64,000 nucleotides of DNA from Obrimoposthia wandeli (lineage: Eukaryota), in NCBI GenBank assembly GCA_977020255.1, contig CDROCS010005160.1, forward strand, positions 1 to 64,000, read 5' to 3'. A program made the position numbers and the translations under genes. Below, one piece after another: positions 12,481-43,545 of the stretch (its first letter is position 1; every line of letters starts with the position of its first letter). The notes below the pieces were generated by a model. It ran no database searches. It saw only the letters and a program-made list of their open reading frames with translations, and had not been told where the DNA came from.

Positions 12481-12488
12481 TATAAAAG
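12481..12488 (+). promoter_or_regulatory. Consensus TATA-box-like TATAAAAG, once per unit, pointing antisense into RING-B (representative copy)
   Basis: Exact TATAWAAG match. It could arise by chance in AT-rich DNA, and there is no expression evidence. Confidence 0.2.
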
Positions 12489-12567
12489 GTCACTAAATCT
12501 TTGTATCGCACCCAAATTAATCAAGTGTCATTATCCTATTGTTGGGGTTTCTATTTGAAACTCTTAT

Positions 12568-12885: not shown

Positions 12886-12946
12886 TGCAGTGGGTGAAGT
12901 GGTTTTGAGTTAGGACTCGGTTGAGGGTTGGTATGTTGTGTGATAT

Positions 12947-24294: not shown

Positions 24295-25245
24295 TGCAGT
24301 GGGTGAAGTGGTTTTGAGTTAGGACTCGGTTGAGGGTTGGTATGTTGTGTGATATTTACACAAAAGTGGCTGTGTCCTGTCGTTCTGCCACACAGAAGAA
24401 CAACCAACACTCTCTCAGTTTTCTATAACAATATTCCACTCGTACAACTACGTCCGCTTGGTTTGGTTCGATCATGATGTACTTTGTGAGTTGTCTTCTG
24501 CATACGGGGCAACAAAGTATGTTGGATGAGATAACTCTCCATAACTTATGATACATTTTGATATACATTCCTCGTGTTATAGGTGGTTGCAGGCATTGGG
24601 TCTTGCTCTTAGTACATTGTCAGAGTATAAAATAATCGCCATCAATGGAAAAAAATATTTTCAACTGGAAATATTTTATATAAACGATGTGGACAACTCC
24701 ATTGCGATTATATTGTGCCGCTGTATTGTTCTGCTGATTTACGTTGTATATGGACACTTACAGTTTATAATAATTCATTTTAAATTGAAAAAGTCAATTC
24801 AAAACAGAAATGAACATCTTATACGTGACATAAAAAGAAAAGCTCTACAAAATAAGTTGATTGAATTAAGCACTGAATTAAGAGAAAGTGAACAACATTT
24901 CAAACTTTTAAGAAAAATATAATTGAAAAAGTCAATTCAAAAAATTTGAGTTCTTAACAGAAGTTGAATTACTGTATGGCCTACCCTTATTTGTCTCAAT
25001 AAATTGAGGTCATTGCGTGAATTGTCAAAATCAAAGGAAATCTTCAGTTAAATAGTAAATTAGATTCAGTAATAAAAATATATGTCCGATATGAACGCCT
25101 ATTTCCGAAGCAATACTTATTTGGCAACTTACTGATGCGCTTTACTATTCGCACAACCTATAAAAGGTCACTAAATCTTTGTATCGCACCTAAATTAATC
25201 AAGTGTCATTATCCTATTGTTGGGGTTTCTATTTGAAACTCTTAT

Positions 25246-25563
25246 TCAAGTAGATCTTCGTATGGAGGCCCCAAACACCAGTTCTGTAGCGATAGGGCTT
25301 ACATAGAGATGTGGTCTACCTGTTCTATTCTTGTTTAATTGTACGATCTTTCCATCTGTGTGGTTGTGTTCTCGATTTACGATGTGGTACATCGAGAATG
25401 TTGCCCTGCACATTGGACAGGATGGGAAGTCGAGGGACTTGGTGCTGTTGGCAATGGGTATCCAGGTCTTGAGGCAGTGAATGTGGAATTGGTGGCCGCA
25501 GATGTTAGGCTCTGCAAGCCAGTTCCAGATTGTCTTGTAACAGACGGAATATTCTCCAGACAT
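25246..25563 (-). CDS. RING-B 105 aa copy
   Basis: Identical protein. Confidence 0.55.
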   Translation of the reverse strand: MSGEYSVCYKTIWNWLAEPNICGHQFHIHCLKTWIPIANSTKSLDFPSCPMCRATFSMYHIVNREHNHTDGKIVQLNKNRTGRPHLYVSPIATELVFGASIRRST

Positions 25564-26511
25564 TGCAGTGGGTGAAGTGGTTTTGAGTTAGGACTCGGTT
25601 GAGGGTTGGTATGTTGTGTGATATTTACACAAAAGTGGCTGTGTCCTGTCGTTCTGCCACACAGAAGAACAACCAACACTCTCTCAGTTTTCTATAACAA
25701 TATTCCACTCGTACAACTACGTCCGCTTGGTTTGGTTCGATCATGATGTACTTTGTGAGTTGTCTTCTGCATACGGGGCAACAAAGTATGTTGGATGAGA
25801 TAACTCTCCATAACTTATGATACATTTTGATATACATTCCTCGTGTTATAGGTGGTTGCAGGCATTGGGTCTTGCTCTTAGTACATTGTCAGAGTATAAA
25901 ATAATCGCCATCAATGGAAAAAATATTTTCAACTGGAAATATTTTATATAAACGATGTGGACAACTCCATTGCGATTATATTGTGCCGCTGTATTGTTCT
26001 GCTGATTTACGTTGTATATGGACACTTACAGTTTATAATAATTCATTTTAAATTGAAAAAGTCAATTCAAAACAGAAATGAACATCTTATACGTGACATA
26101 AAAAGAAAAGCTCTACAAAATAAGTTGATTGAATTAAGCACTGAATTAAGAGAAAGTGAACAACATTTCAAACTTTTAAGAAAAATATAATTGAAAAAGT
26201 CAATTCAAAAAATGAGTTCTTAACAGAAGTTGAATTACTGTATGGCCTACCCTTATTTGTCTCAATAAATTGAGGTCATTGCGTGAATTGTCAAAATCAA
26301 AGGAAATCTTCAGTTAAATAGTAAATTAGATTCAGTAATAAAAATATATGTCCGATATGAACGCCTATTTCCGAAGCAATACTTATTTGGCAACTTACTG
26401 ATGCGCTTTACTATTCGCACAACCTATAAAAGGTCACTAAATCTTTGTATCGCACCTAAATTAATCAAGTGTCATTATCCTATTGTTGGGGTTTCTATTT
26501 GAAACTCTTAT

Positions 26512-26829
26512 TCAAGTAGATCTTCGTATGGAGGCCCCAAACACCAGTTCTGTAGCGATAGGGCTTACATAGAGATGTGGTCTACCTGTTCTATTCTTGT
26601 TTAATTGTACGATCTTTCCATCTGTGTGGTTGTGTTCTCGATTTACGATGTGGTACATCGAGAATGTTGCCCTGCACATTGGACAGGATGGGAAGTCGAG
26701 GGACTTGGTGCTGTTGGCAATGGGTATCCAGGTCTTGAGGCAGTGAATGTGGAATTGGTGGCCGCAGATGTTAGGCTCTGCAAGCCAGTTCCAGATTGTC
26801 TTGTAACAGACGGAATATTCTCCAGACAT
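26512..26829 (-). CDS. RING-B 105 aa copy
   Basis: Identical protein. Confidence 0.55.
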   Translation of the reverse strand: MSGEYSVCYKTIWNWLAEPNICGHQFHIHCLKTWIPIANSTKSLDFPSCPMCRATFSMYHIVNREHNHTDGKIVQLNKNRTGRPHLYVSPIATELVFGASIRRST

Positions 26830-27780
26830 TGCAGTGGGTGAAGTGGTTTTGAGTTAGGACTCGGTTGAGGGTTGGTATGTTGTGTGATATTTACACAAAA
26901 GTGGCTGTGTCCTGTCGTTCTGCCACACAGAAGAACAACCAACACTCTCTCAGTTTTCTATAACAATATTCCACTCGTACAACTACGTCCGCTTGGTTTG
27001 GTTCGATCATGATGTACTTTGTGAGTTGTCTTCTGCATACGGGGCAACAAAGTATGTTGGATGAGATAACTCTCCATAACTTATGATACATTTTGATATA
27101 CATTCCTCGTGTTATAGGTGGTTGCAGGCATTGGGTCTTGCTCTTCGTACATTGTCAGAGTATAAAATAATCGCCATCAATGGAAAAAAATATTTTCAAC
27201 TGGAAATATTTTATATAAACGATGTGGACAACTCCATTGCGATTATATTGTGCCGCTGTATTGTTCTGCTGATTTACGTTGTATATGGACACTTACAGTT
27301 TATAATAATTCATTTTAAATTGAAAAAGTCAATTCAAAACAGAAATGAACATCTTATACGTGACATAAAAAGAAAAGCTCTACAAAATAAGTTGATTGAA
27401 TTAAGCACTGAATTAAGAGAAAGTGAACAACATTTCAAACTTTTAAGAAAAATATAATTGAAAAAGTCAATTCAAAAAATTTGAGTTCTTAACAGAAGTT
27501 GAATTACTGTATGGCCTACCCTTATTTGTCTCAATAAATTGAGGTCATTGCGTGAATTGTCAAAATCAAAGGAAATCTTCAGTTAAATAGTAAATTAGAT
27601 TCAGTAATAAAAATATATGTCCGATATGAACGCCTATTTCCGAAGCAATACTTATTTGGCAACTTACTGATGCGCTTTACTATTCGCACAACCTATAAAA
27701 GGTCACTAAATCTTTGTATCGCACCTAAATTAATCAAGTGTCATTATCCTATTGTTGGGGTTTCTATTTGAAACTCTTAT

Positions 27781-28098
27781 TCAAGTAGATCTTCGTATGG
27801 AGGCCCCAAACACCAGTTCTGTAGCGATAGGGCTTACATAGAGATGTGGTCTACCTGTTCTATTCTTGTTTAATTGTACGATCTTTCCATCTGTGTGGTT
27901 GTGTTCTCGATTTACGATGTGGTACATCGAGAATGTTGCCCTGCACATTGGACAGGATGGGAAGTCGAGGGACTTGGTGCTGTTGGCAATGGGTATCCAG
28001 GTCTTGAGGCAGTGAATGTGGAATTGGTGGCCGCAGATGTTAGGCTCTGCAAGCCAGTTCCAGATTGTCTTGTAACAGACGGAATATTCTCCAGACAT
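27781..28098 (-). CDS. RING-B 105 aa copy
   Basis: Identical protein. Confidence 0.55.
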   Translation of the reverse strand: MSGEYSVCYKTIWNWLAEPNICGHQFHIHCLKTWIPIANSTKSLDFPSCPMCRATFSMYHIVNREHNHTDGKIVQLNKNRTGRPHLYVSPIATELVFGASIRRST

Positions 28099-29049
28099 TG
28101 CAGTGGGTGAAGTGGTTTTGAGTTAGGACTCGGTTGAGGGTTGGTATGTTGTGTGATATTTACACAAAAGTGGCTGTGTCCTGTCGTTCTGCCACACAGA
28201 AGAACAACCAACACTCTCTCAGTTTTCTATAACAATATTCCACTCGTACAACTACGTCCGCTTGGTTTGGTTCGATCATGATGTACTTTGTGAGTTGTCT
28301 TCTGCATACGGGGCAACAAAGTATGTTGGATGAGATAACTCTCCATAACTTATGATACATTTTGATATACATTCCTCATGTTATAGGTGGTTGCAGGCAT
28401 TGGGTCTTGCTCTTCGTACATTGTCAGAGTATAAAATAATCGCCATCAATGGAAAAAAATATTTTCAACTGGAAATATTTTATATAAACGATGTGGACAA
28501 CTCCATTGCGATTATATTGTGCCGCTGGATTGTTCTGCTGATTTACGTTGTATATGGACACTTACAGTTTATAATAATTCATTTTAAATTGAAAAAGTCA
28601 ATTCAAAACAGAAATGAACATCTTATACGTGACATAAAAAGAAAAGCTCTACAAAATAAGTTGATTGAATTAAGCACTGAATTAAGAGAAAGTGAACAAC
28701 ATTTCAAACTTTTAAGAAAAATATAATTGAAAAAGTCAATTCAAAAAATTTGAGTTCTTAACAGAAGTTGAATTACTGTATGGCCTACCCTTATTTGTCT
28801 CAATAAATTGAGGTCATTGCGTGAATTGTCAAAATCAAAGGAAATCTTCAGTTAAATAGTAAATTAGATTCAGTAATAAAAATATATGTCCGATATGAAC
28901 GCCTATTTCCGAAGCAATACTTATTTGGCAACTTACTGATGCGCTTTACTATTCGCACAACCTATAAAAGGTCACTAAATCTTTGTATCGCACCTAAATT
29001 AATCAAGTGTCATTATCCTATTGTTGGGGTTTCTATTTGAAACTCTTAT

Positions 29050-29367
29050 TCAAGTAGATCTTCGTATGGAGGCCCCAAACACCAGTTCTGTAGCGATAGG
29101 GCTTACATAGAGATGTGGTCTACCTGTTCTATTCTTGTTTAATTGTACGATCTTTCCATCTGTGTGGTTGTGTTCTCGATTTACGATGTGGTACATCGAG
29201 AATGTTGCCCTGCACATTGGACAGGATGGGAAGTCGAGGGACTTGGTGCTGTTGGCAATGGGTATCCAGGTCTTGAGGCAGTGAATGTGGAATTGGTGGC
29301 CGCAGATGTTAGGCTCTGCAAGCCAGTTCCAGATTGTCTTGTAACAGACGGAATATTCTCCAGACAT
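29050..29367 (-). CDS. RING-B 105 aa copy
   Basis: Identical protein. Confidence 0.55.
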   Translation of the reverse strand: MSGEYSVCYKTIWNWLAEPNICGHQFHIHCLKTWIPIANSTKSLDFPSCPMCRATFSMYHIVNREHNHTDGKIVQLNKNRTGRPHLYVSPIATELVFGASIRRST

Positions 29368-30316
29368 TGCAGTGGGTGAAGTGGTTTTGAGTTAGGACTC
29401 GGTTGAGGGTTGGTATGTTGTGTGATATTTACACAAAAGTGGCTGTGTCCTGTCGTTCTGCCACACAGAAGAACAACCAACACTCTCTCAGTTTTCTATA
29501 ACAATATTCCACTCGTACAACTACGTCCGCTTGGTTTGGTTCGATCATGATGTACTTTGTGAGTTGTCTTCTGCATACGGGGCAACAAAGTATGTTGGAT
29601 GAGATAACTCTCCATAACTTATGATACATTTTGATATACATTCCTCGTGTTATAGGTGGTTGCAGGCATTGGGTCTTGCTCTTCGTACATTGTCAGAGTA
29701 TAAAATAATCGCCATCAATGGAAAAAAATATTTTCAACTGGAAATATTTTATATAAACGATGTGGACAACTCCATTGCGATTATATTGTGCCGCTGTATT
29801 GTTCTGCTGATTTACGTTGTATATGGACACTTACAGTTTATAATAATTCATTTTAAATTGAAAAAGTCAATTCAAAACAGAAATGAACATCTTATACGTG
29901 ACATAAAAAGAAAAGCTCTACAAAATAAGTTGATTGAATTAAGCACTGAATTAAGAGAAAGTGAACAACATTTCAAACTTTTAAGAAAAATATAATTGAA
30001 AAAGTCAATTCAAAAAATGAGTTCTTAACAGAAGTTGAATTACTGTATGGCCTACCCTTATTTGTCTCAATAAATTGAGGTCATTGCGTGAATTGTCAAA
30101 ATCAAAGGAAATCTTCAGTTAAATAGTAAATTAGATTCAGTAATAAAAATATATGTCCGATATGAACGCCTATTTCCGAAGCAATACTTATTTGGCAACT
30201 TACTGATGCGCTTTACTATTCGCACAACCTATAAAAGGTCACTAAATCTTTGTATCGCACCCAAATTAATCAAGTGTCATTATCCTATTGTTGGGGTTTC
30301 TATTTGAAACTCTTAT

Positions 30317-30634
30317 TCAAGTAGATCTTCGTATGGAGGCCCCAAACACCAGTTCTGTAGCGATAGGGCTTACATAGAGATGTGGTCTACCTGTTCTATT
30401 CTTGTTTAATTGTACGATCTTTCCATCTGTGTGGTTGTGTTCTCGATTTACGATGTGGTACATCGAGAATGTTGCCCTGCACATTGGACAGGATGGGAAG
30501 TCGAGGGACTTGGTGCTGTTGGCAATGGGTATCCAGGTCTTGAGGCAGTGAATGTGGAATTGGTGGCCGCAGATGTTAGGCTCTGCAAGCCAGTTCCAGA
30601 TTGTCTTGTAACAGACGGAATATTCTCCAGACAT
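30317..30634 (-). CDS. RING-B 105 aa copy
   Basis: Identical protein; flanks carry the variant SNP haplotype. Confidence 0.55.
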   Translation of the reverse strand: MSGEYSVCYKTIWNWLAEPNICGHQFHIHCLKTWIPIANSTKSLDFPSCPMCRATFSMYHIVNREHNHTDGKIVQLNKNRTGRPHLYVSPIATELVFGASIRRST

Positions 30635-31264
30635 TGCAGTGGGTGAAGTGGTTTTGAGTTAGGACTCGGTTGAGGGTTGGTTTGTTGTGTGATGTTTACA
30701 CAAAAGTGGCTGTGTCCTGTCGTTCTGCTACACAGAAGAACAACCAACACTCTCTCAGTTTTCTATAACAATATTCCACTCGTACAACTACGTCCGCTTG
30801 GTTTGGTTCGATCATGATGTACTTTGTGAGTTGTCTTCTGCATACGGGGCAACAAAGTATGTTGGATGAGATAACTCTCCATAACTTATGATACATTTTG
30901 ATATACATTCCTCATGTTATAGGTGGTTGCAGGCATTGGGTCTTGCTCTTCGTACATTGTCAGAGTATAAAATAATCGCCATCAATGGAAAAAAATATTT
31001 TCAACTGGAAATATTTTATATAAACGATGTGGACAACTCCATTGCGATTATATTGTGCCGCTGGATTGTTCTGCTGATTTACGTTGTATATGGACACTTA
31101 CAGTTTATAATAATTCATTTTAAATTGAAAAAGTCAATTCAAAACAGAAATGAACATCTTATACGTGACATAAAAAGAAAAGCTCTACAAAATAAGTTGA
31201 TTGAATTAAGCACTGAATTAAGAGAAAGTGAACAACATTTCAAACTTTTAAGAAAAATATAATT

Positions 31265-31505
31265 GAAAATATCCTAAAGTCAATTCAAAAAAATGAGTTT
31301 AGTTCTTAACAGAAGTTATTAACTATATATCAACATTTATTTACAAAATGAATTACTGTATGGCCTACCTTATCTCAATAAATTGAAATAGGCTGATTGG
31401 TGAATATTTTAAAAATAAGTGTAAAATTAAACAAATTGTCAAAATCAAAATATTGTTCATTAAATAAACCACTGTTTAAATCTTTTAATTGTATTTCAGT
31501 TAAAA
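31265..31505. other. Mosaic of long-spacer fragments and short-unit start (probable consensus artefact)
   Basis: Spacer pieces (GAAAATATCCTAAAG; TTATTAACTATATATCAACATTTATTTACAAAATG; GTGAATATTTTAAAAATAAGTG; TTGTTCATTAAATAAACC) are interleaved, in their original order, with short-unit sequence. Period is 1,382 bp. Confidence 0.75.
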
Positions 31506-31698
31506 TAGTAAATTAGATTCAGTAATAAAAATATATGTCCGATATGAACGCCTATTTCCGAAGCAATACTTATTTGGCAACTTACTGATGCGCTTTACTA
31601 TTCGCACAACCTATAAAAGGTCACTAAATCTTTGTATCGCACCCAAATTAATCAAGTGTCATTATCCTATTGTTGGGGTTTCTATTTGAAACTCTTAT

Positions 31699-32016
31699 TC
31701 AAGTAGATCTTCGTATGGAGGCCCCAAACACCAGTTCTGTAGCGATAGGGCTTACATAGAGATGTGGTCTACCTGTTCTATTCTTGTTTAATTGTACGAT
31801 CTTTCCATCTGTGTGGTTGTGTTCTCGATTTACGATGTGGTACATCGAGAATGTTGCCCTGCACATTGGACAGGATGGGAAGTCGAGGGACTTGGTGCTA
31901 GTGGCAATGGGTATCCAGGTCTTGAGGCAGTGAATGTGGAATTGGTGGCCGCAGATGTTAGGCTCTGCAAGCCAGTTCCAGATTGTCTTGTAACAGACGG
32001 AATATTCTCCAGACAT
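31699..32016 (-). CDS. RING-B 105 aa copy (N-to-T variant, IPIATSTK)
   Basis: One substitution relative to consensus. Confidence 0.55.
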   Translation of the reverse strand: MSGEYSVCYKTIWNWLAEPNICGHQFHIHCLKTWIPIATSTKSLDFPSCPMCRATFSMYHIVNREHNHTDGKIVQLNKNRTGRPHLYVSPIATELVFGASIRRST

Positions 32017-32529
32017 TGCAGTGGGTGAAGTGGTTTTGAGTTAGGACTCGGTTGAGGGTTGGTTTGTTGTGTGATGTTTACACAAAAGTGGCTGTGTCCT
32101 GTCGTTCTGCTACACAGAAGAACAACCAACACTCTTTCAGTTTTCTATAACAATATTCCACTCGTACAACTACGTCCGCTTGGTTTGGTTCGATCATGAT
32201 GTACTTTGTGAGTTGTCTTCTGCATACGGGGCAACAAAGTATGTTGGATGAGATAACTCTCCATAACTTATGATACATTTTGATATACATTCCTCATGTT
32301 ATAGGTGGTTGCAGGCATTGGGTCTTGCTCTTCGTACATTGTCAGAGTATAAAATAATCGCCATCAATGGAAAAAAATATTTTCAACTGGAAATATTTTA
32401 TATAAACGATGTGGACAACTCCATTGCGATTATATTGTGCCGCTGGATTGTTCTGCTGATTTACGTTGTATATGGACACTTACAGTTTATAATAATTCAT
32501 TTTAAATTGAAAAAGTCAATTCAAAACAG

Positions 32530-32946
32530 AAATGAACATCTTATACGTGACATAAAAAGAAAAGCTCTACAAAATAAGTTGATTGAATTAAGCACTGAAT
32601 TAAGAGAAAGTGAACAACATTTCAAACTTTTAAGAAAAATATAATTTCTTATTTCCTGAAAATATCCTAAAGGTTCTATGGTTTCTTAAAATTTAATTTT
32701 TTTAATTTACCGATTTAATAAATTTCCCCATTTAGCTGGATTCTAGTTTATACTGGAACTTTCCTTAGCTTCAGAATAAAAAATTTACTAGTATTTAAAA
32801 ATATCAATCATATAGGTATGCTTACTAGAAATGAGTCATTATTAACTATATATCAACATTTATTTACAAAATGAAAACTTCTAACTGTAGTTATACGAAT
32901 GATCTGTCATTTGAATATTAACTTCTACAAACTACAATTATATTAA
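32530..32946 (+). pseudogene. Putative spliced gene fragment (coiled-coil exon, then hydrophobic segment), continuous only in the long unit
   Basis: Exon-like NEHLIRDIKRKALQNKLIELSTELRESEQHFKLLRKI(YNFLFPENILKVL). Candidate introns are 32681-32735 (GTTTCT..CATTTAG, 55 nt) and 32816-32890 (GTATGC..CTAACTGTAG, 75 nt). The frame needs ATATATAATTT as at 3047 and 6311; this copy lacks one TA. No family recognised. Confidence 0.3.
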
Positions 32947-33551
32947 TTTGAAATTTTACAAACTTTGTTTGTCAGATTCTCCTTCCTTTTTCACCTTAAG
33001 ATGAGAATTTGATTTATGTTCTTTATTCGAATATTTAGATTTGAAATAGGCTTCTAATTTCTTAATATCATCTATTGTTGGTTCTATTCTACTTAAACCT
33101 CTGTTAATCATTTCGATTTTGAATTTTATATTTATTAAATTTTATAAAGATTTAAGAAATTTTTTTTAATTGATCACGTGAATATTTTAAAAATAAGTGT
33201 GTAAAATTAAACATTCTGTATCTACAATCAGTAAATATCTTATTTTAAAATATAAAAGCCTGTTTATGAAGCCTATTTTTTTCATCCAAAATTTGTCTTA
33301 AAAATATATAAATTAAAATAATTTAAAACAATCCAATACCTCTAATAATTAATTGTTCATTAAATAAACCTCTGTTTATAATTCTAAAAAAGTTTAATTG
33401 TATTTCTTTTCAAAATATTGATGGTTAAAAATTAATTTCGTATATTTTTTTTATCGCAAGAATTCCTTATATTCTAAATCTTCCGGTCAATTTCAAATAT
33501 TATGTTGGAGCTAGCGTTGTTACACCTAATATGTAGACCTCTTCTACCCTT
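32646..33551. repeat. Long-unit AT-rich spacer (~906 bp, clean copy), absent from short units
   Basis: The period here is 2,153 bp rather than ~1,268 bp. The same segment occurs at 3056, 6321 and partially at 204. Confidence 0.92.
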
Positions 33552-33851
33552 ATGAGTTCTTAACAGAAGTTGAATTACTGTATGGCCTACCCTTATTTGT
33601 CTCAATAAATTGAGGTCATTGCGTGAATTGTCAAAATCAAAGGAAATCTTCAGTTAAATAGTAAATTAGATTCAGTAATAAAAATATATGTCCGATATGA
33701 ACGCCTATTTCCGAAGCAATACTTATTTGGCAACTTACTGATGCGCTTTACTATTCGCACAACCTATAAAAGGTCACTAAATCTTTGTATCGCACCCAAA
33801 TTAATCAAGTGTCATTATCCTATTGTTGGGGTTTCTATTTGAAACTCTTAT

Positions 33852-34169
33852 TCAAGTAGATCTTCGTATGGAGGCCCCAAACACCAGTTCTGTAGCGATA
33901 GGGCTTACATAGAGATGTGGTCTACCTGTTCTATTCTTGTTTAATTGTACGATCTTTCCATCTGTGTGGTTGTGTTCTCGATTTACGATGTGGTACATCG
34001 AGAATGTTGCCCTGCACATTGGACAGGATGGGAAGTCGAGGGACTTGGTGCTGTTGGCAATGGGTATCCAGGTCTTGAGGCAGTGAATGTGGAATTGGTG
34101 GCCGCAGATGTTAGGCTCTGCAAGCCAGTTCCAGATTGTCTTGTAACAGACGGAATATTCTCCAGACAT
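33852..34169 (-). CDS. RING-B 105 aa copy
   Basis: Identical protein; this unit follows the long spacer. Confidence 0.55.
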   Translation of the reverse strand: MSGEYSVCYKTIWNWLAEPNICGHQFHIHCLKTWIPIANSTKSLDFPSCPMCRATFSMYHIVNREHNHTDGKIVQLNKNRTGRPHLYVSPIATELVFGASIRRST

Positions 34170-34230
34170 TGCAGTGGGTGAAGTGGTTTTGAGTTAGGAC
34201 TCGGTTGAGGGTTGGTTTGTTGTGTGATGT

Positions 34231-34518
34231 TTACACAAAAGTGGCTGTGTCCTGTCGTTCTGCTACACAGAAGAACAACCAACACTCTTTCAGTTTTCTA
34301 TAACAATATTCCACTCGTACAACTACGTCCGCTTGGTTTGGTTCGATCATGATGTACTTTGTGAGTTGTCTTCTGCATACGGGGCAACAAAGTATGTTGG
34401 ATGAGATAACTCTCCATAACTTATGATACATTTTGATATACATTCCTCATGTTATAGGTGGTTGCAGGCATTGGGTCTTGCTCTTCGTACATTGTCAGAG
34501 TATAAAATAATCGCCATC
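34231..34518 (-). pseudogene. Degenerate RING-A copy in the post-long-spacer variant unit
   Basis: Same broken C-x-H-x2-H-x2-C ... CPVC motif as 12947-13233. Confidence 0.65.
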
Positions 34519-34795
34519 AATGGAAAAAAATATTTTCAACTGGAAATATTTTATCTAAACGATGTGGACAACTCCATTGCGATTATATTGTGCCGCTGGA
34601 TTGTTCTGCTGATTTACGTTGTATATGGACACTTACAGTTTATAATAATTCATTTTAAATTGAAAAAGTCAATTCAAAACAGAAATGAACATCTTATACG
34701 TGACATAAAAAGAAAAGCTCTACAAAATAAGTTGATTGAATTAAGCACTGAATTAAGAGAAAGTGAACAACATTTCAAACTTTTAAGAAAAATAT

Positions 34796-34823
34796 AATTG
34801 AAAAAGTCAATTCAAAAAAATGA
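34796..34823 (+). other. Short-unit junction: 20-nt templated insert between AATT and ATGA microhomologies (representative copy)
   Basis: Junction AATT-GAAAAAGTCAATTCAAAAAA-ATGA copies AATTGAAAAAGTCAATTCAAAACAGAAATGA at 34658-34687. Confidence 0.8.
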
Positions 34824-35119
34824 GTTCTTAACAGAAGTTGAATTACTGTATGGCCTACCCTTATTTGTCTCAATAAATTGAGGTCATTGCGTGAATTGTC
34901 AAAATCAAAGGAAATCTTCAGTTAAATAGTAAATTAGATTCAGTAATAAAAATATATGTCCGATATGAACGCCTATTTCCGAAGCAATACTTATTTGGCA
35001 ACTTACTGATGCGCTTTACTATTCGCACAACCTATAAAAGGTCACTAAATCTTTGTATCGCACCCAAATTAATCAAGTGTCATTATCCTATTGTTGGGGT
35101 TTCTATTTGAAACTCTTAT

Positions 35120-35437
35120 TCAAGTAGATCTTCGTATGGAGGCCCCAAACACCAGTTCTGTAGCGATAGGGCTTACATAGAGATGTGGTCTACCTGTTCT
35201 ATTCTTGTTTAATTGTACGATCTTTCCATCTGTGTGGTTGTGTTCTCGATTTACGATGTGGTACATCGAGAATGTTGCCCTGCACATTGGACAGGATGGG
35301 AAGTCGAGGGACTTGGTGCTGTTGGCAATGGGTATCCAGGTCTTGAGGCAGTGAATGTGGAATTGGTGGCCGCAGATGTTAGGCTCTGCAAGCCAGTTCC
35401 AGATTGTCTTGTAACAGACGGAATATTCTCCAGACAT
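35120..35437 (-). CDS. RING-B 105 aa copy
   Basis: Identical protein. Confidence 0.55.
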   Translation of the reverse strand: MSGEYSVCYKTIWNWLAEPNICGHQFHIHCLKTWIPIANSTKSLDFPSCPMCRATFSMYHIVNREHNHTDGKIVQLNKNRTGRPHLYVSPIATELVFGASIRRST

Positions 35438-36123
35438 TGCAGTGGGTGAAGTGGTTTTGAGTTAGGACTCGGTTGAGGGTTGGTTTGTTGTGTGATGTTT
35501 ACACAAAAGTGGCTGTGTCCTGTCGTTCTGCCACACAGGAGAACAACCAACACTCTCTCAGTTTTCTATAACAATATTCCACTCGTACAACTACGTCCGC
35601 TTGGTTTGGTTCGATCATGATGTACTTTGTGAGTTGTCTTCTGCATACGGGGCAACAAAGTATGTTGGATGAGATAACTCTCCATAACTTATGATACATT
35701 TTGATATACATTCCTCATGTTATAGGTGGTTGCAGGCATTGGGTCTTGCTCTTCGTACATTGTCAGAGTATAAAATAATCGCCATCAATGGAAAAAAATA
35801 TTTTCAACTGGAAATATTTTATATAAACGATGTGGACAACTCCATTGCGATTATATTGTGCCGCTGGATTGTTCTGCTGATTTACGTTGTATATGGACAC
35901 TTACAGTTTATAATAATTCATTTTAAATTGAAAAAGTCAATTCAAAACAGAAATGAACATCTTATACGTGACATAAAAAGAAAAGCTCTACAAAATAAGT
36001 TGATTGAATTAAGCACTGAATTAAGAGAAAGTGAACAACATTTCAAACTTTTAAGAAAAATATAATTGAAAAAGTCAATTCAAAAAATGAGTTCTTAACA
36101 GAAGTTGAATTACTGTATGGCCT

Positions 36124-36258
36124 ACTTCCTTATTTAATTTGAAATCTCAATAAATTGATTTATGTTCTTTATTCGTCATTTCTTAATATCATCTATTGCG
36201 TGAATTGTCAAAATCAAAGGAAATCTTCAGTTAAATAGTAAATTAGATTCAAAATATT
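36124..36258. other. Small mosaic of long-spacer fragments in a short unit (probable consensus artefact)
   Basis: Inserted TTGATTTATGTTCTTTATTCG and TTTCTTAATATCATCTATTG come from the long spacer. Period is 1,316 bp. Confidence 0.7.
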
Positions 36259-36435
36259 GTAATAAAAATATATGTCCGATATGAACGCCTATTTCCGAAG
36301 CAATACTTATTTGGCAACTTACTGATGCGCTTTACTATTCGCACAACCTATAAAAGGTCACTAAATCTTTGTATCGCACCCAAATTAATCAAGTGTCATT
36401 ATCCTATTGTTGGGGTTTCTATTTGAAACTCTTAT

Positions 36436-36753
36436 TCAAGTAGATCTTCGTATGGAGGCCCCAAACACCAGTTCTGTAGCGATAGGGCTTACATAGAGAT
36501 GTGGTCTACCTGTTCTATTCTTGTTTAATTGTACGATCTTTCCATCTGTGTGGTTGTGTTCTCGATTTACGATGTGGTACATCGAGAATGTTGCCCTGCA
36601 CATTGGACAGGATGGGAAGTCGAGGGACTTGGTGCTGTTGGCAATGGGTATCCAGGTCTTGAGGCAGTGAATGTGGAATTGGTGGCCGCAGATGTTAGGC
36701 TCTGCAAGCCAGTTCCAGATTGTCTTGTAACAGACGGAATATTCTCCAGACAT
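36436..36753 (-). CDS. RING-B 105 aa copy
   Basis: Identical protein. Confidence 0.55.
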   Translation of the reverse strand: MSGEYSVCYKTIWNWLAEPNICGHQFHIHCLKTWIPIANSTKSLDFPSCPMCRATFSMYHIVNREHNHTDGKIVQLNKNRTGRPHLYVSPIATELVFGASIRRST

Positions 36754-37384
36754 TGCAGTGGGTGAAGTGGTTTTGAGTTAGGACTCGGTTGAGGGTTGGT
36801 ATGTTGTGTGATATTTACACAAAAGTGGCTGTGTCCTGTCGTTCTGCCACACAGAAGAACAACCAACACTCTCTCAGTTTTCTATAACAATATTCCACTC
36901 GTACAACTACGTCCGCTTGGTTTGGTTCGATCATGATGTACTTTGTGAGTTGTCTTCTGCATACGGGGCAACAAAGTATGTTGGATGAGATAACTCTCCA
37001 TAACTTATGATACATTTTGATATACATTCCTCATGTTATAGGTGGTTGCAGGCATTGGGTCTTGCTCTTCGTACATTGTCAGAGTATAAAATAATCGCCA
37101 TCAATGGAAAAAATATTTTCAACTGGAAATATTTTATATAAACGATGTGGACAACTCCATTGCGATTATATTGTGCCGCTGGATTGTTCTGCTGATTTAC
37201 GTTGTATATGGACACTTACAGTTTATAATAATTCATTTTAAATTGAAAAAGTCAATTCAAAACAGAAATGAACATCTTATACGTGACATAAAAAGAAAAG
37301 CTCTACAAAATAAGTTGATTGAATTAAGCACTGAATTAAGAGAAAGTGAACAACATTTCAAACTTTTAAGAAAAATATAATTGA

Positions 37385-38175
37385 AAATAATTCAAAGGTT
37401 CTATGGTTTCTTAACAGATTGAATTTTTTTAATGGCCTACCGATTTAATAAATTTCCCCATTTAGCTGGATTCTAGTCATACTGGAACTTTCAGCTTCAA
37501 ATAGTAAAAGATTCAGTATTTAAAAATATCAATCATATAACGTATGCTTCCGACTAGAAATAGTCATTATTAACTATATATCGCATTTATTTACAACCTA
37601 TGAAAAGGTCTTCTAACTGTAGTTATACGAATGATCTGTCATTTGAATATTGTTGGGGTTTCTACAAACTACAATTATATTAATTTGAAATTTTACAAAC
37701 TTCTGTAGCGATTCTCCTTCTTTTTCATAGAGATGATTTATGTTCTTTATTCGAATATTTAGATTTGAAATAGGCTTCTAATTTCTTAATATCATCTATT
37801 GTTGGTTCTATTCTACTTAAACCTCTGTTAATCATTTCGATTTTGAATTTTATATTTATTAAATTTTATAAAGATCAATTGATCACGTGAATATTTTATA
37901 AATAAGTGTGTAAAATTAAACATTCTGTATCTAAATCAGTAAATATTTTTTTAAAATATAAACGATGTGGACGTTATATTGTGCCGCTGTATTGTTATTT
38001 AATATTTGTTTAAATAATATAAATTGAAAATCAATTCAAAACAGAAATAACCTCTTATAATTCATAAAAAGAAAAGCTCTACAAAATAAGTTGATTGAAT
38101 TAAGCAAATTAAGAGAAAGTGAACAACATTTCAAACATTAAAGAAAAATATAATTGAAAAGTCAATTCAAAAAAT
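37385..38175. other. Long spacer partly overwritten by short-unit sequence (probable consensus artefact)
   Basis: Mostly spacer sequence in order, with patches of short-unit sequence (e.g. AACGATGTGGAC...GTGCCGCTGTATTG, GAAAAGCTCTACAAAATAAG). Period is 2,038 bp. Confidence 0.75.
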
Positions 38176-38473
38176 GAGTTCTTAACAGAAGTTGAATTAC
38201 TGTATGGCCTACCCTTATTTGTCTCAATAAATTGAGGTCATTGCGTGAATTGTCAAAATCAAAGGAAATCTTCAGTTAAATAGTAAATTAGATTCAGTAA
38301 TAAAAATATATGTCCGATATGAACGCCTATTTCCGAAGCAATACTTATTTGGCAACTTACTGATGCGCTTTACTATTCGCACAACCTATAAAAGGTCACT
38401 AAATCTTTGTATCGCACCCAAATTAATCAAGTGTCATTATCCTATTGTTGGGGTTTCTATTTGAAACTCTTAT

Positions 38474-38791
38474 TCAAGTAGATCTTCGTATGGAGGCCCC
38501 AAACACCAGTTCTGTAGCGATAGGGCTTACATAGAGATGTGGTCTACCTGTTCTATTCTTGTTTAATTGTACGATCTTTCCATCTGTGTGGTTGTGTTCT
38601 CGATTTACGATGTGGTACATCGAGAATGTTGCCCTGCACATTGGACAGGATGGGAAGTCGAGGGACTTGGTGCTGTTGGCAATGGGTATCCAGGTCTTGA
38701 GGCAGTGAATGTGGAATTGGTGGCCGCAGATGTTAGGCTCTGCAAGCCAGTTCCAGATTGTCTTGTAACAGACGGAATATTCTCCAGACAT
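38474..38791 (-). CDS. RING-B 105 aa copy
   Basis: Identical protein. Confidence 0.55.
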   Translation of the reverse strand: MSGEYSVCYKTIWNWLAEPNICGHQFHIHCLKTWIPIANSTKSLDFPSCPMCRATFSMYHIVNREHNHTDGKIVQLNKNRTGRPHLYVSPIATELVFGASIRRST

Positions 38792-39740
38792 TGCAGTGGG
38801 TGAAGTGGTTTTGAGTTAGGACTCGGTTGAGGGTTGGTATGTTGTGTGATATTTACACAAAAGTGGCTGTGTCCTGTCGTTCTGCCACACAGAAGAACAA
38901 CCAACACTCTCTCAGTTTTCTATAACAATATTCCACTCGTACAACTACGTCCGCTTGGTTTGGTTCGATCATGATGTACTTTGTGAGTTGTCTTCTGCAT
39001 ACGGGGCAACAAAGTATGTTGGATGAGATAACTCTCCATAACTTATGATACATTTTGATATACATTCCTCGTGTTATAGGTGGTTGCAGGCATTGGGTCT
39101 TGCTCTTCGTACATTGTCAGAGTATAAAATAATCGCCATCAATGGAAAAAAATATTTTCAACTGGAAATATTTTATATAAACGATGTGGACAACTCCATT
39201 GCGATTATATTGTGCCGCTGTATTGTTCTGCTGATTTACGTTGTATATGGACACTTACAGTTTATAATAATTCATTTTAAATTGAAAAAGTCAATTCAAA
39301 ACAGAAATGAACATCTTATACGTGACATAAAAAGAAAAGCTCTACAAAATAAGTTGATTGAATTAAGCACTGAATTAAGAGAAAGTGAACAACATTTCAA
39401 ACTTTTAAGAAAAATATAATTGAAAAAGTCAATTCAAAAAATGAGTTCTTAACAGAAGTTGAATTACTGTATGGCCTACCCTTATTTGTCTCAATAAATT
39501 GAGGTCATTGCGTGAATTGTCAAAATCAAAGGAAATCTTCAGTTAAATAGTAAATTAGATTCAGTAATAAAAATATATGTCCGATATGAACGCCTATTTC
39601 CGAAGCAATACTTATTTGGCAACTTACTGATGCGCTTTACTATTCGCACAACCTATAAAAGGTCACTAAATCTTTGTATCGCACCCAAATTAATCAAGTG
39701 TCATTATCCTATTGTTGGGGTTTCTATTTGAAACTCTTAT

Positions 39741-40058
39741 TCAAGTAGATCTTCGTATGGAGGCCCCAAACACCAGTTCTGTAGCGATAGGGCTTACATA
39801 GAGATGTGGTCTACCTGTTCTATTCTTGTTTAATTGTACGATCTTTCCATCTGTGTGGTTGTGTTCTCGATTTACGATGTGGTACATCGAGAATGTTGCC
39901 CTGCACATTGGACAGGATGGGAAGTCGAGGGACTTGGTGCTGTTGGCAATGGGTATCCAGGTCTTGAGGCAGTGAATGTGGAATTGGTGGCCGCAGATGT
40001 TAGGCTCTGCAAGCCAGTTCCAGATTGTCTTGTAACAGACGGAATATTCTCCAGACAT
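39741..40058 (-). CDS. RING-B 105 aa copy
   Basis: Identical protein. Confidence 0.55.
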   Translation of the reverse strand: MSGEYSVCYKTIWNWLAEPNICGHQFHIHCLKTWIPIANSTKSLDFPSCPMCRATFSMYHIVNREHNHTDGKIVQLNKNRTGRPHLYVSPIATELVFGASIRRST

Positions 40059-41007
40059 TGCAGTGGGTGAAGTGGTTTTGAGTTAGGACTCGGTTGAGGG
40101 TTGGTATGTTGTGTGATATTTACACAAAAGTGGCTGTGTCCTGTCGTTCTGCCACACAGAAGAACAACCAACACTCTCTCAGTTTTCTATAACAATATTC
40201 CACTCGTACAACTACGTCCGCTTGGTTTGGTTCGATCATGATGTACTTTGTGAGTTGTCTTCTGCATACGGGGCAACAAAGTATGTTGGATGAGATAACT
40301 CTCCATAACTTATGATACATTTTGATATACATTCCTCGTGTTATAGGTGGTTGCAGGCATTGGGTCTTGCTCTTCGTACATTGTCAGAGTATAAAATAAT
40401 CGCCATCAATGGAAAAAATATTTTCAACTGGAAATATTTTATATAAACGATGTGGACAACTCCATTGCGATTATATTGTGCCGCTGGATTGTTCTGCTGA
40501 TTTACGTTGTATATGGACACTTACAGTTTATAATAATTCATTTTAAATTGAAAAAGTCAATTCAAAACAGAAATGAACATCTTATACGTGACATAAAAAG
40601 AAAAGCTCTACAAAATAAGTTGATTGAATTAAGCACTGAATTAAGAGAAAGTGAACAACATTTCAAACTTTTAAGAAAAATATAATTGAAAAAGTCAATT
40701 CAAAAAAATGAGTTCTTAACAGAAGTTGAATTACTGTATGGCCTACCCTTATTTGTCTCAATAAATTGAGGTCATTGCGTGAATTGTCAAAATCAAAGGA
40801 AATCTTCAGTTAAATAGTAAATTAGATTCAGTAATAAAAATATATGTCCGATATGAACGCCTATTTCCGAAGCAATACTTATTTGGCAACTTACTGATGC
40901 GCTTTACTATTCGCACAACCTATAAAAGGTCACTAAATCTTTGTATCGCACCCAAATTAATCAAGTGTCATTATCCTATTGTTGGGGTTTCTATTTGAAA
41001 CTCTTAT

Positions 41008-41325
41008 TCAAGTAGATCTTCGTATGGAGGCCCCAAACACCAGTTCTGTAGCGATAGGGCTTACATAGAGATGTGGTCTACCTGTTCTATTCTTGTTTAA
41101 TTGTACGATCTTTCCATCTGTGTGGTTGTGTTCTCGATTTACGATGTGGTACATCGAGAATGTTGCCCTGCACATTGGACAGGATGGGAAGTCGAGGGAC
41201 TTGGTGCTGTTGGCAATGGGTATCCAGGTCTTGAGGCAGTGAATGTGGAATTGGTGGCCGCAGATGTTAGGCTCTGCAAGCCAGTTCCAGATTGTCTTGT
41301 AACAGACGGAATATTCTCCAGACAT
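41008..41325 (-). CDS. RING-B 105 aa copy
   Basis: Identical protein. Confidence 0.55.
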   Translation of the reverse strand: MSGEYSVCYKTIWNWLAEPNICGHQFHIHCLKTWIPIANSTKSLDFPSCPMCRATFSMYHIVNREHNHTDGKIVQLNKNRTGRPHLYVSPIATELVFGASIRRST

Positions 41326-42276
41326 TGCAGTGGGTGAAGTGGTTTTGAGTTAGGACTCGGTTGAGGGTTGGTATGTTGTGTGATATTTACACAAAAGTGG
41401 CTGTGTCCTGTCGTTCTGCCACACAGAAGAACAACCAACACTCTCTCAGTTTTCTATAACAATATTCCACTCGTACAACTACGTCCGCTTGGTTTGGTTC
41501 GATCATGATGTACTTTGTGAGTTGTCTTCTGCATACGGGGCAACAAAGTATGTTGGATGAGATAACTCTCCATAACTTATGATACATTTTGATATACATT
41601 CCTCGTGTTATAGGTGGTTGCAGGCATTGGGTCTTGCTCTTCGTACATTGTCAGAGTATAAAATAATCGCCATCAATGGAAAAAAATATTTTCAACTGGA
41701 AATATTTTATATAAACGATGTGGACAACTCCATTGCGATTATATTGTGCCGCTGTATTGTTCTGCTGATTTACGTTGTATATGGACACTTACAGTTTATA
41801 ATAATTCATTTTAAATTGAAAAAGTCAATTCAAAACAGAAATGAACATCTTATACGTGACATAAAAAGAAAAGCTCTACAAAATAAGTTGATTGAATTAA
41901 GCACTGAATTAAGAGAAAGTGAACAACATTTCAAACTTTTAAGAAAAATATAATTGAAAAAGTCAATTCAAAAAATTTGAGTTCTTAACAGAAGTTGAAT
42001 TACTGTATGGCCTACCCTTATTTGTCTCAATAAATTGAGGTCATTGCGTGAATTGTCAAAATCAAAGGAAATCTTCAGTTAAATAGTAAATTAGATTCAG
42101 TAATAAAAATATATGTCCGATATGAACGCCTATTTCCGAAGCAATACTTATTTGGCAACTTACTGATGCGCTTTACTATTCGCACAACCTATAAAAGGTC
42201 ACTAAATCTTTGTATCGCACCCAAATTAATCAAGTGTCATTATCCTATTGTTGGGGTTTCTATTTGAAACTCTTAT

Positions 42277-42594
42277 TCAAGTAGATCTTCGTATGGAGGC
42301 CCCAAACACCAGTTCTGTAGCGATAGGGCTTACATAGAGATGTGGTCTACCTGTTCTATTCTTGTTTAATTGTACGATCTTTCCATCTGTGTGGTTGTGT
42401 TCTCGATTTACGATGTGGTACATCGAGAATGTTGCCCTGCACATTGGACAGGATGGGAAGTCGAGGGACTTGGTGCTGTTGGCAATGGGTATCCAGGTCT
42501 TGAGGCAGTGAATGTGGAATTGGTGGCCGCAGATGTTAGGCTCTGCAAGCCAGTTCCAGATTGTCTTGTAACAGACGGAATATTCTCCAGACAT
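42277..42594 (-). CDS. RING-B 105 aa copy
   Basis: Identical protein. Confidence 0.55.
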   Translation of the reverse strand: MSGEYSVCYKTIWNWLAEPNICGHQFHIHCLKTWIPIANSTKSLDFPSCPMCRATFSMYHIVNREHNHTDGKIVQLNKNRTGRPHLYVSPIATELVFGASIRRST

Positions 42595-43545
42595 TGCAGT
42601 GGGTGAAGTGGTTTTGAGTTAGGACTCGGTTGAGGGTTGGTATGTTGTGTGATATTTACACAAAAGTGGCTGTGTCCTGTCGTTCTGCCACACAGAAGAA
42701 CAACCAACACTCTCTCAGTTTTCTATAACAATATTCCACTCGTACAACTACGTCCGCTTGGTTTGGTTCGATCATGATGTACTTTGTGAGTTGTCTTCTG
42801 CATACGGGGCAACAAAGTATGTTGGATGAGATAACTCTCCATAACTTATGATACATTTTGATATACATTCCTCGTGTTATAGGTGGTTGCAGGCATTGGG
42901 TCTTGCTCTTCGTACATTGTCAGAGTATAAAATAATCGCCATCAATGGAAAAAAATATTTTCAACTGGAAATATTTTATATAAACGATGTGGACAACTCC
43001 ATTGCGATTATATTGTGCCGCTGTATTGTTCTGCTGATTTACGTTGTATATGGACACTTACAGTTTATAATAATTCATTTTAAATTGAAAAAGTCAATTC
43101 AAAACAGAAATGAACATCTTATACGTGACATAAAAAGAAAAGCTCTACAAAATAAGTTGATTGAATTAAGCACTGAATTAAGAGAAAGTGAACAACATTT
43201 CAAACTTTTAAGAAAAATATAATTGAAAAAGTCAATTCAAAAAATTTGAGTTCTTAACAGAAGTTGAATTACTGTATGGCCTACCCTTATTTGTCTCAAT
43301 AAATTGAGGTCATTGCGTGAATTGTCAAAATCAAAGGAAATCTTCAGTTAAATAGTAAATTAGATTCAGTAATAAAAATATATGTCCGATATGAACGCCT
43401 ATTTCCGAAGCAATACTTATTTGGCAACTTACTGATGCGCTTTACTATTCGCACAACCTATAAAAGGTCACTAAATCTTTGTATCGCACCCAAATTAATC
43501 AAGTGTCATTATCCTATTGTTGGGGTTTCTATTTGAAACTCTTAT

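What the first reader, a model, noticed from the sequence alone, without database searches (positions are those of the whole stretch)
32641..34823. Short unit was born from the long unit by a ~906-bp deletion patched with a locally templated 20-nt insert
Seen: long = ...AAAATA(TA)TAATT|TCTTATTTCC..906 bp..CTACCCTT|ATGAGTTC. Short = ...AAAATATAATT|GAAAAAGTCAATTCAAAAAA|ATGAGTTC. The insert copies AATTGAAAAAGTCAATTCAAAA(CAG)AAATGA located ~140 bp upstream in the same unit (34658-34687). It has 4-nt microhomology at both switch points (AATT and ATGA), and the template contains a perfect hairpin AATTGA-AAAAG-TCAATT. Net change is 906-20, about 886 bp, matching 2,153-1,268. Established: deletions with microhomology and locally templated inserts are the signature of polymerase-theta-mediated end joining or replication template switching. 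Inference: a single repair scar founded the dominant monomer and was amplified more than 40-fold, which fixes the direction long to short.
Basis: partly seen in the sequence, partly recalled or inferred. Interest (0 to 1): 0.7.

Follow-up and report, generated by a model that had tools for sequence, protein, structure and literature searches.

The report
Repair scar that founded a tandem repeat
In an animal genome, the roughly 50 assembled copies of a 1.27-kb tandem repeat that carries a small RING-finger gene all share one joint where 905 bases of an older 2.15-kb unit are missing and 20 bases copied from 138 bases upstream sit in their place; this is a clean but ordinary example of a known error-prone DNA repair scar that was later amplified.

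Summary
L units read tail(...AATT)|905-bp spacer (32647-33551)|head(ATGA...). S units read tail|20-nt filler (34800-34819)|head. The filler repeats 34662-34679, which lies 138 bp upstream. With the shared AATT and the AAATGA beyond a skipped CAG, 28 of 31 template bases recur. The largest chance match in 2,000 simulations was 14 nt; 18 to 22 nt are observed.

The long-to-short direction is supported by four points, but no outgroup was available:
- The filler is bounded on both sides exactly by the L breakpoints.
- The spacer, tail and head are low copy: the array plus three non-array copies, all L-type.
- The spacer has no terminal repeats or target duplication.
- The S joint occurs only in this array (46 exact copies).

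The non-array copies suggest that the 2,153-bp L unit is the originally duplicated segment, with its founding joint near 34488-34493.

Not shown:
- Whether the event was a deletion or an S-sized tandem duplication; both give the same joint.
- Whether polymerase theta was the enzyme.
- Any role for the hairpin, which is weak (-3.2 kcal/mol).

The amplification argument for direction is not valid by itself. The assembly is imperfect here: there are three probable L/S consensus chimeras and an indel-rich left edge. Verdict: a new member of a known kind, of moderate interest.

The parts
523..64000 (+). Tandem array of S units (1,266-1,270 bp) with a few L units. It continues to C5160:70607. Units from 11004 onward are about 99.5% alike.
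32647..33551 (+). 905-bp AT-rich spacer of the best-preserved L unit; this is the segment missing from S units.
   Evidence: Only 9 places in the 1.35-Gb assembly; no terminal inverted repeat or target duplication.
32643..32646 (+). AATT, the last 4 nt of the tail before the spacer (left breakpoint and priming microhomology).
33552..33555 (+). ATGA, the first 4 nt of the head after the spacer (right breakpoint and resolving microhomology). Non-array copies read GTGA.
34658..34688 (+). Template: AATT, an 18-nt core, CAG, then AAATGA. It lies inside the tail open frame (codons for KLKKSIQNRNE) and is conserved in all units and in the non-array copies.
34800..34819 (+). 20-nt filler of the S joint, a copy of 34662-34679 plus AA. 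The same filler sits at every S joint.
33852..34169 (-). 105-aa RING-H2 open frame, intact in 45 units. It lies in the part of the unit (unit positions 395-939) that belongs to a dispersed repeat family.
34423..34797 (+). 124-aa open frame of the tail. Its stop codon ends 2 nt before the left breakpoint. The frame is also open in both non-array copies.
34488..34493 (+). Joint between the dispersed-repeat (RING) piece and the tail. Non-array copies carry unrelated sequence X to the left of this point. It is the probable founding duplication joint of the 2,153-bp L unit.
3056..3972 (+). Second full spacer copy (92%) in an L unit at the indel-rich left edge.
6321..7210 (+). Third spacer copy (93%) in an L unit at the left edge.
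204..522 (+). The 3' 319 bp of a spacer (99.4% to 33233-33551), next to the contig start.
31264..31503 (+). Mosaic in which pieces of the S joint and head alternate, in order, with pieces of the spacer. Probably an L/S consensus chimera, not a second scar.
37382..38173 (+). Garbled L-type interval: spacer positions 11-707 (83%, indel-rich) overlapping a 78% copy of the tail end and an S joint. Probably a chimeric consensus of L and S reads.

Best explanation
The 2,153-bp L unit is the older arrangement. It consists of a RING-gene piece from a dispersed repeat, a tail exon-like segment, the 905-bp spacer and the head. One germline rearrangement joined the tail end (...AATT) to the head start ((A)TGA...), so that the 905-bp spacer was lost from between two units.

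The joint was sealed by synthesis-dependent microhomology end joining. A 3' end paired at a 3-4-nt microhomology and copied about 20-27 nt of the tail region 138 bp upstream. Either the tail's AATT end primed on the upstream AATT (loop-out), or the head's TCAT end primed on the upstream ATGA of the resected tail strand (trans). The polymerase slipped over CAG between two A runs, the strand dissociated, and it re-annealed at the other microhomology. Polymerase theta is the usual enzyme for this in animals.

The resulting S-S joint was then multiplied by unequal exchange to at least 46 assembled copies, and the flanks of the remaining L units were homogenised with S units.

Shown: the anatomy, the uniqueness of the filler match, the identity of all S joints, and the L-type state of all non-array copies. 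Inferred: the direction, the single event, the enzyme and the order of steps.
For: - Breakpoints, filler and template read directly. L is 2,153 bp, and the filler's only match of 10 nt or more in L is the 18-mer at the template; the simulation maximum was 14 nt.
- The template is conserved in every unit and in the non-array copies.
- The same filler is at all S joints, with 46 exact hits, all in this array.
- The spacer has 9 places genome-wide, the tail 55 candidates and the head 58. That equals the array plus three non-array copies, each reading tail-spacer-head.
- The non-array copies differ from the array spacer by 2.4%, 5.7% and 14%, mostly by substitutions, so the L arrangement is old.
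- They carry unrelated sequence X where the array has the dispersed-repeat piece, with the switch at unit positions 937-942. This makes them a pre-array state rather than copies taken out of the array.
- There is no terminal repeat or target duplication at the spacer ends, and no joint lacking both spacer and filler.
- If S were ancestral, an insertion would have had to remove exactly the 20 nt that duplicate upstream sequence.
- The mechanism matches published loop-out and trans SD-MMEJ (PMC5728401) and the templated inserts of polymerase-theta end joining seen in natural C. elegans indels (PMC4490562).
Against: - No outgroup species or second individual was examined.
- A tree of joint flanks is a star in which L flanks are identical to S flanks, so it gives no polarity.
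- The tails of the non-array copies are 98-99% identical to the array, so exchange with the array has occurred and they are not clean outgroups.
- A 905-bp loss is large compared with the 7-13 bp typical at programmed breaks in C. elegans (PMC4490562).
- The copy is imperfect, because CAG is skipped.
- The assembly is unreliable in places, so 'all S joints identical' is only as good as the consensus and the k-mer unitigs.
Confidence: 0.6

Rival explanations
1. Same repair chemistry, different topology. The S joint is the breakpoint of a 1.27-kb tandem duplication of head-to-tail inside a single L context (spacer-unit-spacer became spacer-unit-filler-unit-spacer). No spacer was ever deleted.
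For: The product is identical base for base to that of a deletion between two L units. Polymerase-theta end joining is reported to make tandem duplications (title and abstract of PMC7368036 as listed; I did not read the paper, and junction microhomology and templated inserts there are from my own knowledge). L units are still interspersed in the array.
Against: Nothing distinguishes it from a deletion. It needs the two ends of one unit to be joined out of order, whereas a deletion needs only one break region in the spacer.
Confidence: 0.2
2. Replication-based template switching (fork stalling, serial slippage) without a double-strand break or polymerase theta. The nascent strand jumped back 138 nt at AATT, copied about 20 nt, then jumped forward 905 nt at (A)TGA.
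For: The same microhomologies and the same filler are expected. The locus is AT-rich tandem DNA, where forks stall.
Against: The sequence alone cannot separate this from end joining. The hairpin that might stall a fork is weak.
Confidence: 0.15
3. S is ancestral and L arose by insertion of a 905-bp fragment that replaced the 20 nt. Alternatively, both arose by separate insertions into a filler-less tail-head joint.
For: S is by far the commoner form in the assembly. There is no outgroup to exclude it.
Against: The insertion would have to excise exactly the 20 nt that duplicate upstream sequence. The spacer has no other source in the genome, no terminal repeats and no target duplication. All three non-array copies are L-type, one of them 14% diverged. 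No filler-less joint exists.
Confidence: 0.04
4. Assembly artefact: the L or S form, or the filler, is a product of consensus errors in a collapsed repeat.
For: Three intervals are colinear mixtures of spacer with head or tail sequence. The left-edge units are indel-rich, with identity rising from 89% to 99% away from the contig end.
Against: Forty-six identical S joints. k-mer unitigs of four runs cover the S joint and the spacer-to-head joint at depths of hundreds to thousands, with 480-nt and 321-nt spacer unitigs matching without any difference.
Confidence: 0.01

Closest known systems
Templated-insert deletion scars of polymerase-theta-mediated end joining / SD-MMEJ (C. elegans germline and natural isolates, PMC4490562; Drosophila loop-out, snap-back and trans SD-MMEJ, PMC5728401)
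   Same: A deletion joined with an insert identical to nearby flanking sequence in direct orientation. There is a short primer repeat at the start of the template (AATT) and a short microhomology at the exit ((A)TGA). Copying is imperfect and non-processive.
   Different: 905 bp were lost, far more than the usual few to a few hundred bases. The template lies 138 bp away. The enzyme is untested. The scar is not a private indel but was multiplied to dozens of copies as the joint of a tandem repeat.
Tandem duplications with junction microhomology and templated inserts attributed to polymerase theta (PMC7368036; only its title and abstract were seen; the junction features are from my own knowledge)
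   Same: The same junction features. It would explain an S-S joint arising directly.
   Different: Those are single duplications in repair-deficient backgrounds. Here the joint became the period of a roughly 50-unit array.
Length-variant monomer subfamilies of satellites, and spread of satellites by microhomology-mediated repair (Drosophila X-linked satellites, PMC7403614; only its title and abstract were seen)
   Same: A new monomer length arises from an older one and is amplified and homogenised, with the older form left as a minority in the array.
   Different: Here the founding joint can be read to the base, with its template. The unit is a gene-bearing 1.27-kb cassette (RING-H2 open frame), not a short non-coding satellite.

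Membership tests
TMEJ / SD-MMEJ templated-insertion scar | Deletion with extra bases at the junction | tested here: met
   905 bp absent and 20 nt present in S relative to L.
TMEJ / SD-MMEJ templated-insertion scar | Insert identical to sequence close to the break | tested here: met
   18 nt exact (22 nt with AATT), 138 bp upstream, same strand. It is the only match of 10 nt or more in the L unit, and the simulation maximum was 14 nt.
TMEJ / SD-MMEJ templated-insertion scar | Primer repeat: the break-proximal end matches the bases just before the template | tested here: met
   AATT at 32643-32646 and 34796-34799, and at 34658-34661.
TMEJ / SD-MMEJ templated-insertion scar | Microhomology between the end of the copied stretch and the other break end | tested here: met
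   (A)AATGA follows the template and ATGA starts the head. It is only TGA if the ancestral head began with G, as in all three non-array copies. It also requires the CAG skip.
TMEJ / SD-MMEJ templated-insertion scar | Dependence on polymerase theta | not testable with these tools
   Intron-split family-A polymerase exons exist at C1201 and C2263, but they score alike against Pol theta, Pol nu and Pol I.
TMEJ / SD-MMEJ templated-insertion scar | Usual small deletion size | tested here: inconclusive
   905 bp here, against 7-13 bp at programmed breaks in C. elegans (PMC4490562). Size is typical of the family, not defining.
Transposable-element insertion (spacer as the mobile part) | Terminal repeats and target-site duplication | tested here: not met
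   No inverted or direct repeat pairs the two spacer ends, and the flanks AATT and ATGA differ.
Transposable-element insertion (spacer as the mobile part) | Dispersed copies elsewhere in the genome | tested here: not met
   All 9 first-look candidates were scored, giving 11 matched places; the 8 substantial ones all lie next to tail and/or head sequence (the copy at C1828:14420-15245 keeps only its head side), and the other 3 are the short fragments of the mosaic at 31316-31507.
Deletion by unequal exchange or slippage between direct repeats | A direct repeat at both ends of the lost segment in the long form | tested here: not met
   No direct repeat of 11 nt or more bridges 32647 and 33551, and the filler is not present at either spacer end.

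The most novel reading that the evidence does not exclude
The rearrangement did more than shorten a repeat. It removed everything downstream of the tail open frame's stop codon (2 nt before the breakpoint) and packed the RING-H2 gene and the tail frame into a compact cassette. That cassette was then favoured and amplified, so a single error-prone repair event would have founded a young, possibly expressed, multi-copy ubiquitin-ligase gene array. Its filler would be a built-in lineage tag for tracing the amplification.
Probability: 0.08. Interest if true: 0.55.

Novelty: new member of a known kind. Interest (0 to 1): 0.35.

Why it matters
The founding event of a tandem-repeat monomer can rarely be read to the base with its template still in place. 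Here the joint, the template, the older long form and pre-array copies are all preserved in one genome. That makes this a tidy natural example of templated, microhomology-primed repair shaping repeat architecture in an animal germline. It also gives a 20-nt tag that could be used to count and trace S units in populations. It does not reveal a new mechanism.

It also matters in practice. This array is partly mis-assembled, with L/S consensus chimeras, so copy numbers and L:S ratios taken from the assembly should not be trusted.

Tried and rejected
- **Deeper paralogs.** A protein search with the tail frame found only the array and the two known non-array copies.
- **Polarity from a tree of joint flanks.** The tree is a star; L flanks are identical to S flanks, and the L label needs 5 changes, no better than shuffled labels.
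- **Hairpin as a driver.** It folds at -3.2 kcal/mol with z -1.5, which is not special.
- **Spacer as a transposon.** It has no terminal repeats and is low copy.
- **Structured RNA in the unit.** There were only sub-threshold mir-52 hits (23 bits against a cut-off of 50), repeated once per unit; I dismissed these as chance.
- **Link of the dispersed RING repeat to a giant retroelement (earlier scan notes).** Pfam on the ten longest open frames around eight dispersed copies gave phosphatase and Piwi-like fragments but no reverse transcriptase or integrase. The link is neither confirmed nor excluded.
- **Age of the S joint from the 'diverged' left-edge units.** I dropped this argument. Their differences are indel-rich, have more transitions than transversions, and fade with distance from the contig end, unlike the substitution-dominated real paralogs. 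They may be consensus error.
- **Read depths as copy numbers.** The L share of joints is about 6-10% in two runs, 17% in a third and 39% in a fourth, all from the same sample. This is too inconsistent to use. If the low-depth unitigs (about 4-50x, depending on the run) mark single-copy depth, there may be several tens of spacer copies against 8 assembled, but this is only a hint.
- **Polymerase theta gene.** Family-A polymerase exons are present but are not assignable to theta rather than nu.

Full report
**1. What the window is.**
The window is the first 64 kb of contig C5160 (267 kb) of a 1.35-Gb, 6,912-contig assembly of an AT-rich eukaryote. Earlier scan notes call it planarian-like; I did not test that. 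The assembly also holds many bacterial contigs, with at least 17 intact intron-less bacterial-type PolA genes.

From 523 to C5160:70607 the contig is a head-to-tail array of about 55 units. Most are S units of 1,266-1,270 bp, and from 11004 onward they are about 99.5% alike. I number unit positions from the ATGA at 33552. Each unit has four parts:
- a low-copy head (positions 1-272);
- a piece (about 273-939) related to a dispersed repeat family with at least 4,783 first-look candidates in the genome;
- within that piece, on the minus strand, a 105-aa RING-H2 open frame (Pfam zf-ANAPC11 at 2e-7, zf-rbx1, zf-RING_2), intact in 45 units;
- a low-copy tail (943-1248) holding the end of a 124-aa plus-strand open frame, whose stop codon ends 2 nt before the unit's last AATT.

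**2. The observation.**
- L unit: tail ...AATT (32643-32646), then the spacer 32647-33551 (905 bp), then ATGA... (33552).
- S unit: tail ...AATT (34796-34799), then a 20-nt filler (34800-34819), then ATGA... (34820).
- Template: 34658-34688 reads AATT, then 18 nt identical to the first 18 of the filler, then CAG, then AAATGA. Removing CAG gives the S joint exactly.
- Sizes: the L unit is 2,153 bp, and 2,153 minus 905 plus 20 gives 1,268.

The match is not chance. The 18-mer is the filler's only match of 10 nt or more in an L unit on either strand, and the longest match in 2,000 Markov simulations was 14 nt.

Every S joint in the assembly has the same filler, apart from A-run length, a 13-unit subfamily with T at head position 1, and single-unit base changes inside the filler or its AATT flank (8476; 47055). 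A genome-wide pattern search found 46 exact hits, all in this array.

Logan unitigs of four runs (one sample, probably the source of the assembly) cover the spacer with 480-nt and 321-nt pieces that match without a single difference. The second piece ends 29 nt into the head, as expected at a de Bruijn branch point where L and S paths merge. At the S joint the unitigs show only 1-nt length variants, at 34801 and 34814. No alternative joint leaving the tail end is listed; the one listed joint that lands 12 nt before the S junction (32955 to 34787) is at about single-copy depth in two runs.

**3. Direction.**

(a) Logic of the edges. The filler is bounded on both sides exactly by the points where L and S diverge. 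Going from L to S this is automatic. Going from S to L, an insertion would have to excise precisely the 20 nt that duplicate upstream sequence.

(b) Copy number. The spacer has 9 first-look candidates in the genome, all scored, giving 11 matched places: 8 substantial copies and 3 short fragments inside the mosaic at 31316-31507. The tail has 55 candidates and the head 58. That equals the array plus three non-array copies: C5160:99149-100957, C1828:51216-53354 and C1828:14005-15245. All three are L-type. The first two keep tail, spacer and head; the third keeps only the spacer (from position 64) and the head. Their spacers differ from the array's by 14%, 5.7% and 2.4%, mostly by substitutions.

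(c) Pre-array state. To the left of the tail the non-array copies carry an unrelated sequence X. The array instead has the dispersed-repeat piece there, and the switch lies at unit positions 937-942, window 34488-34493. The simplest reading has three steps. An ancestral single-copy locus read X-tail-spacer-head-RING piece. A tandem duplication joined the RING piece to the tail, creating the 2,153-bp L unit. The 'spacer' is therefore just the middle of that segment.

(d) No transposon features. The spacer has no terminal inverted repeat and no target-site duplication.

(e) No intermediate. No joint lacking both filler and spacer exists in the assembly.

Limits on this argument:
- A maximum-likelihood tree of joint flanks is a star, with L flanks identical to S flanks.
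- The tails of the non-array copies are 98-99% identical to the array. By my count from the translations, most of their few differences change the amino acid, so the similarity is due to recent exchange rather than constraint. They are not clean outgroups.

**4. Mechanism (inferred).**
The joint has the anatomy of synthesis-dependent microhomology-mediated end joining as defined in Drosophila (PMC5728401): a break-proximal primer repeat, short non-processive copying of nearby sequence, unwinding, and re-annealing at a microhomology on the other end. Two routes give the observed product.
- Loop-out: the tail's terminal AATT pairs at the upstream AATT and copies forward.
- Trans: the head end's 3' TCAT pairs with the upstream ATGA on the resected tail strand, about 111 nt from its tip. 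It copies back through AATT. That tetranucleotide is its own complement, so the new end then pairs with the terminal AATT of the tail.

The Drosophila paper notes that loop-out junctions can always be re-read as trans events.

The missing CAG lies between two A runs, which fits slippage of a low-fidelity polymerase; alternatively it could be a later 3-bp loss before amplification.

In animals such templated inserts depend on polymerase theta and are seen in natural indels (PMC4490562), but there the usual loss is 7-13 bp, so 905 bp is atypically large. This genome has intron-split family-A polymerase exons, but I could not assign them to theta rather than nu.

The perfect 6-bp hairpin in the template is weak and not unusual for this composition, and I give it no role.

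All three non-array copies read G where the array reads A at head position 1. The original exit microhomology may therefore have been TGA. In that case the A in the array's L units would be a footprint of homogenisation by S units. That is suggestive only.

**5. What cannot be separated.**
A deletion between two L units and a 1.27-kb tandem duplication inside one L context give the same joint. End joining and replicative template switching predict the same sequence. I give the deletion reading 0.6, the duplication reading 0.2, and all L-derived readings together about 0.9.

**6. Assembly caveats.**
Three intervals interleave, in colinear order, pieces of the spacer with pieces of the head or tail: 31264-31503, about 36130-36260, and 37382-38173. 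This is what a consensus of mixed L and S reads looks like, and it is not what a biological event would produce.

The units at 523-11003 differ from the core by as many gap openings as mismatches, with more transitions than transversions, and their identity rises from 89% to 99% with distance from the contig end. The genuine paralogs are substitution-dominated, with more transversions than transitions. I therefore do not use the left-edge units as evidence that the S joint is old.

Unitig depths give an L share of joints between about 6% and 39%, depending on the run. They hint that the true array is larger than assembled, but I do not rely on them.

**7. Comparison and verdict.**
This is a templated-insertion repair scar of a well-described kind. 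What is unusual is that it became the period-defining joint of a gene-bearing tandem array, and that the older long form and pre-array copies survive beside it.

| Item | Verdict |
|---|---|
| Observation | Confirmed |
| Hairpin role | Not supported |
| Enzyme assignment | Not testable here |
| Novelty | New member of a known kind |
| Interest | About 0.35 |

Noticed in passing
window 31264-31503; 36130-36260; 37382-38173: Colinear interleaving of spacer pieces with S-joint, head or tail pieces. Probably chimeric consensus where L-type and S-type reads were piled together, which implies a collapsed or mis-assembled array.
   Followed up: partly
window 523-11003: Units are 89-98% identical to the core. 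Their differences are about as many gap openings as mismatches, transitions exceed transversions, and the differences fade with distance from the contig start. Their RING frames are broken. This may be an unpolished consensus rather than old copies.
   Followed up: partly
window 1-169: A 45-bp tandem repeat (3.7 copies, 92% matches) at the very start of the contig, directly before a partial spacer (204-522) that is 99.4% identical to 33233-33551.
   Followed up: no
window 33946-34490 (unit positions 395-939), and L013-L020: This part of every unit belongs to a dispersed repeat of about 0.72-0.78 kb, with at least 4,783 first-look candidates genome-wide at about 84-86% identity. Unit positions 270-398 lie 1.5-2.6 kb away from the core in three of the eight dispersed copies examined, so the array unit is a shortened version. 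No retroelement domains were found within 4 kb of the eight copies.
   Followed up: partly
window 34488-34493; C5160:100737-100957; C1828:53135-53354: This is the joint between the dispersed-repeat piece and the tail. The two non-array copies carry a shared unrelated sequence X there, and the tail reading frame stays open about 35-40 codons into X.
   Followed up: partly
window 34423-34797 (+): A 124-aa open frame with a hydrophobic stretch and a charged, coiled-coil-like end, with no Pfam match. It is intact in 35 units and split by a 1-nt A-run difference in about 10. The template for the filler lies inside it.
   Followed up: partly
window 5774-5780: The unit 5240-6315 lacks unit positions 525-709, an internal loss of about 185 bp.
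   Followed up: no
C1828:15240-26412 versus C5160:77922-93860: A block of more than 10 kb, 87-97% identical and inverted, is shared by the two contigs. In C1828 it begins at the point where a spacer copy is truncated at spacer position 64. It is a large repeat or mobile element and is not characterised.
   Followed up: no
whole assembly (e.g. C6357:197927-199054, C5022:11114-12250): At least 17 full-length, intron-less bacterial-type DNA polymerase I genes. The assembly contains many bacterial contigs besides the animal genome.
   Followed up: no
window 19875, 24946, 27481, 28750, 41977-47054, 55924, 62262: A subfamily of 13 S units reads T instead of A at head position 1. These units often occur in runs (five in a row at 41977-47054), which marks blocks of local amplification.
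   Followed up: no
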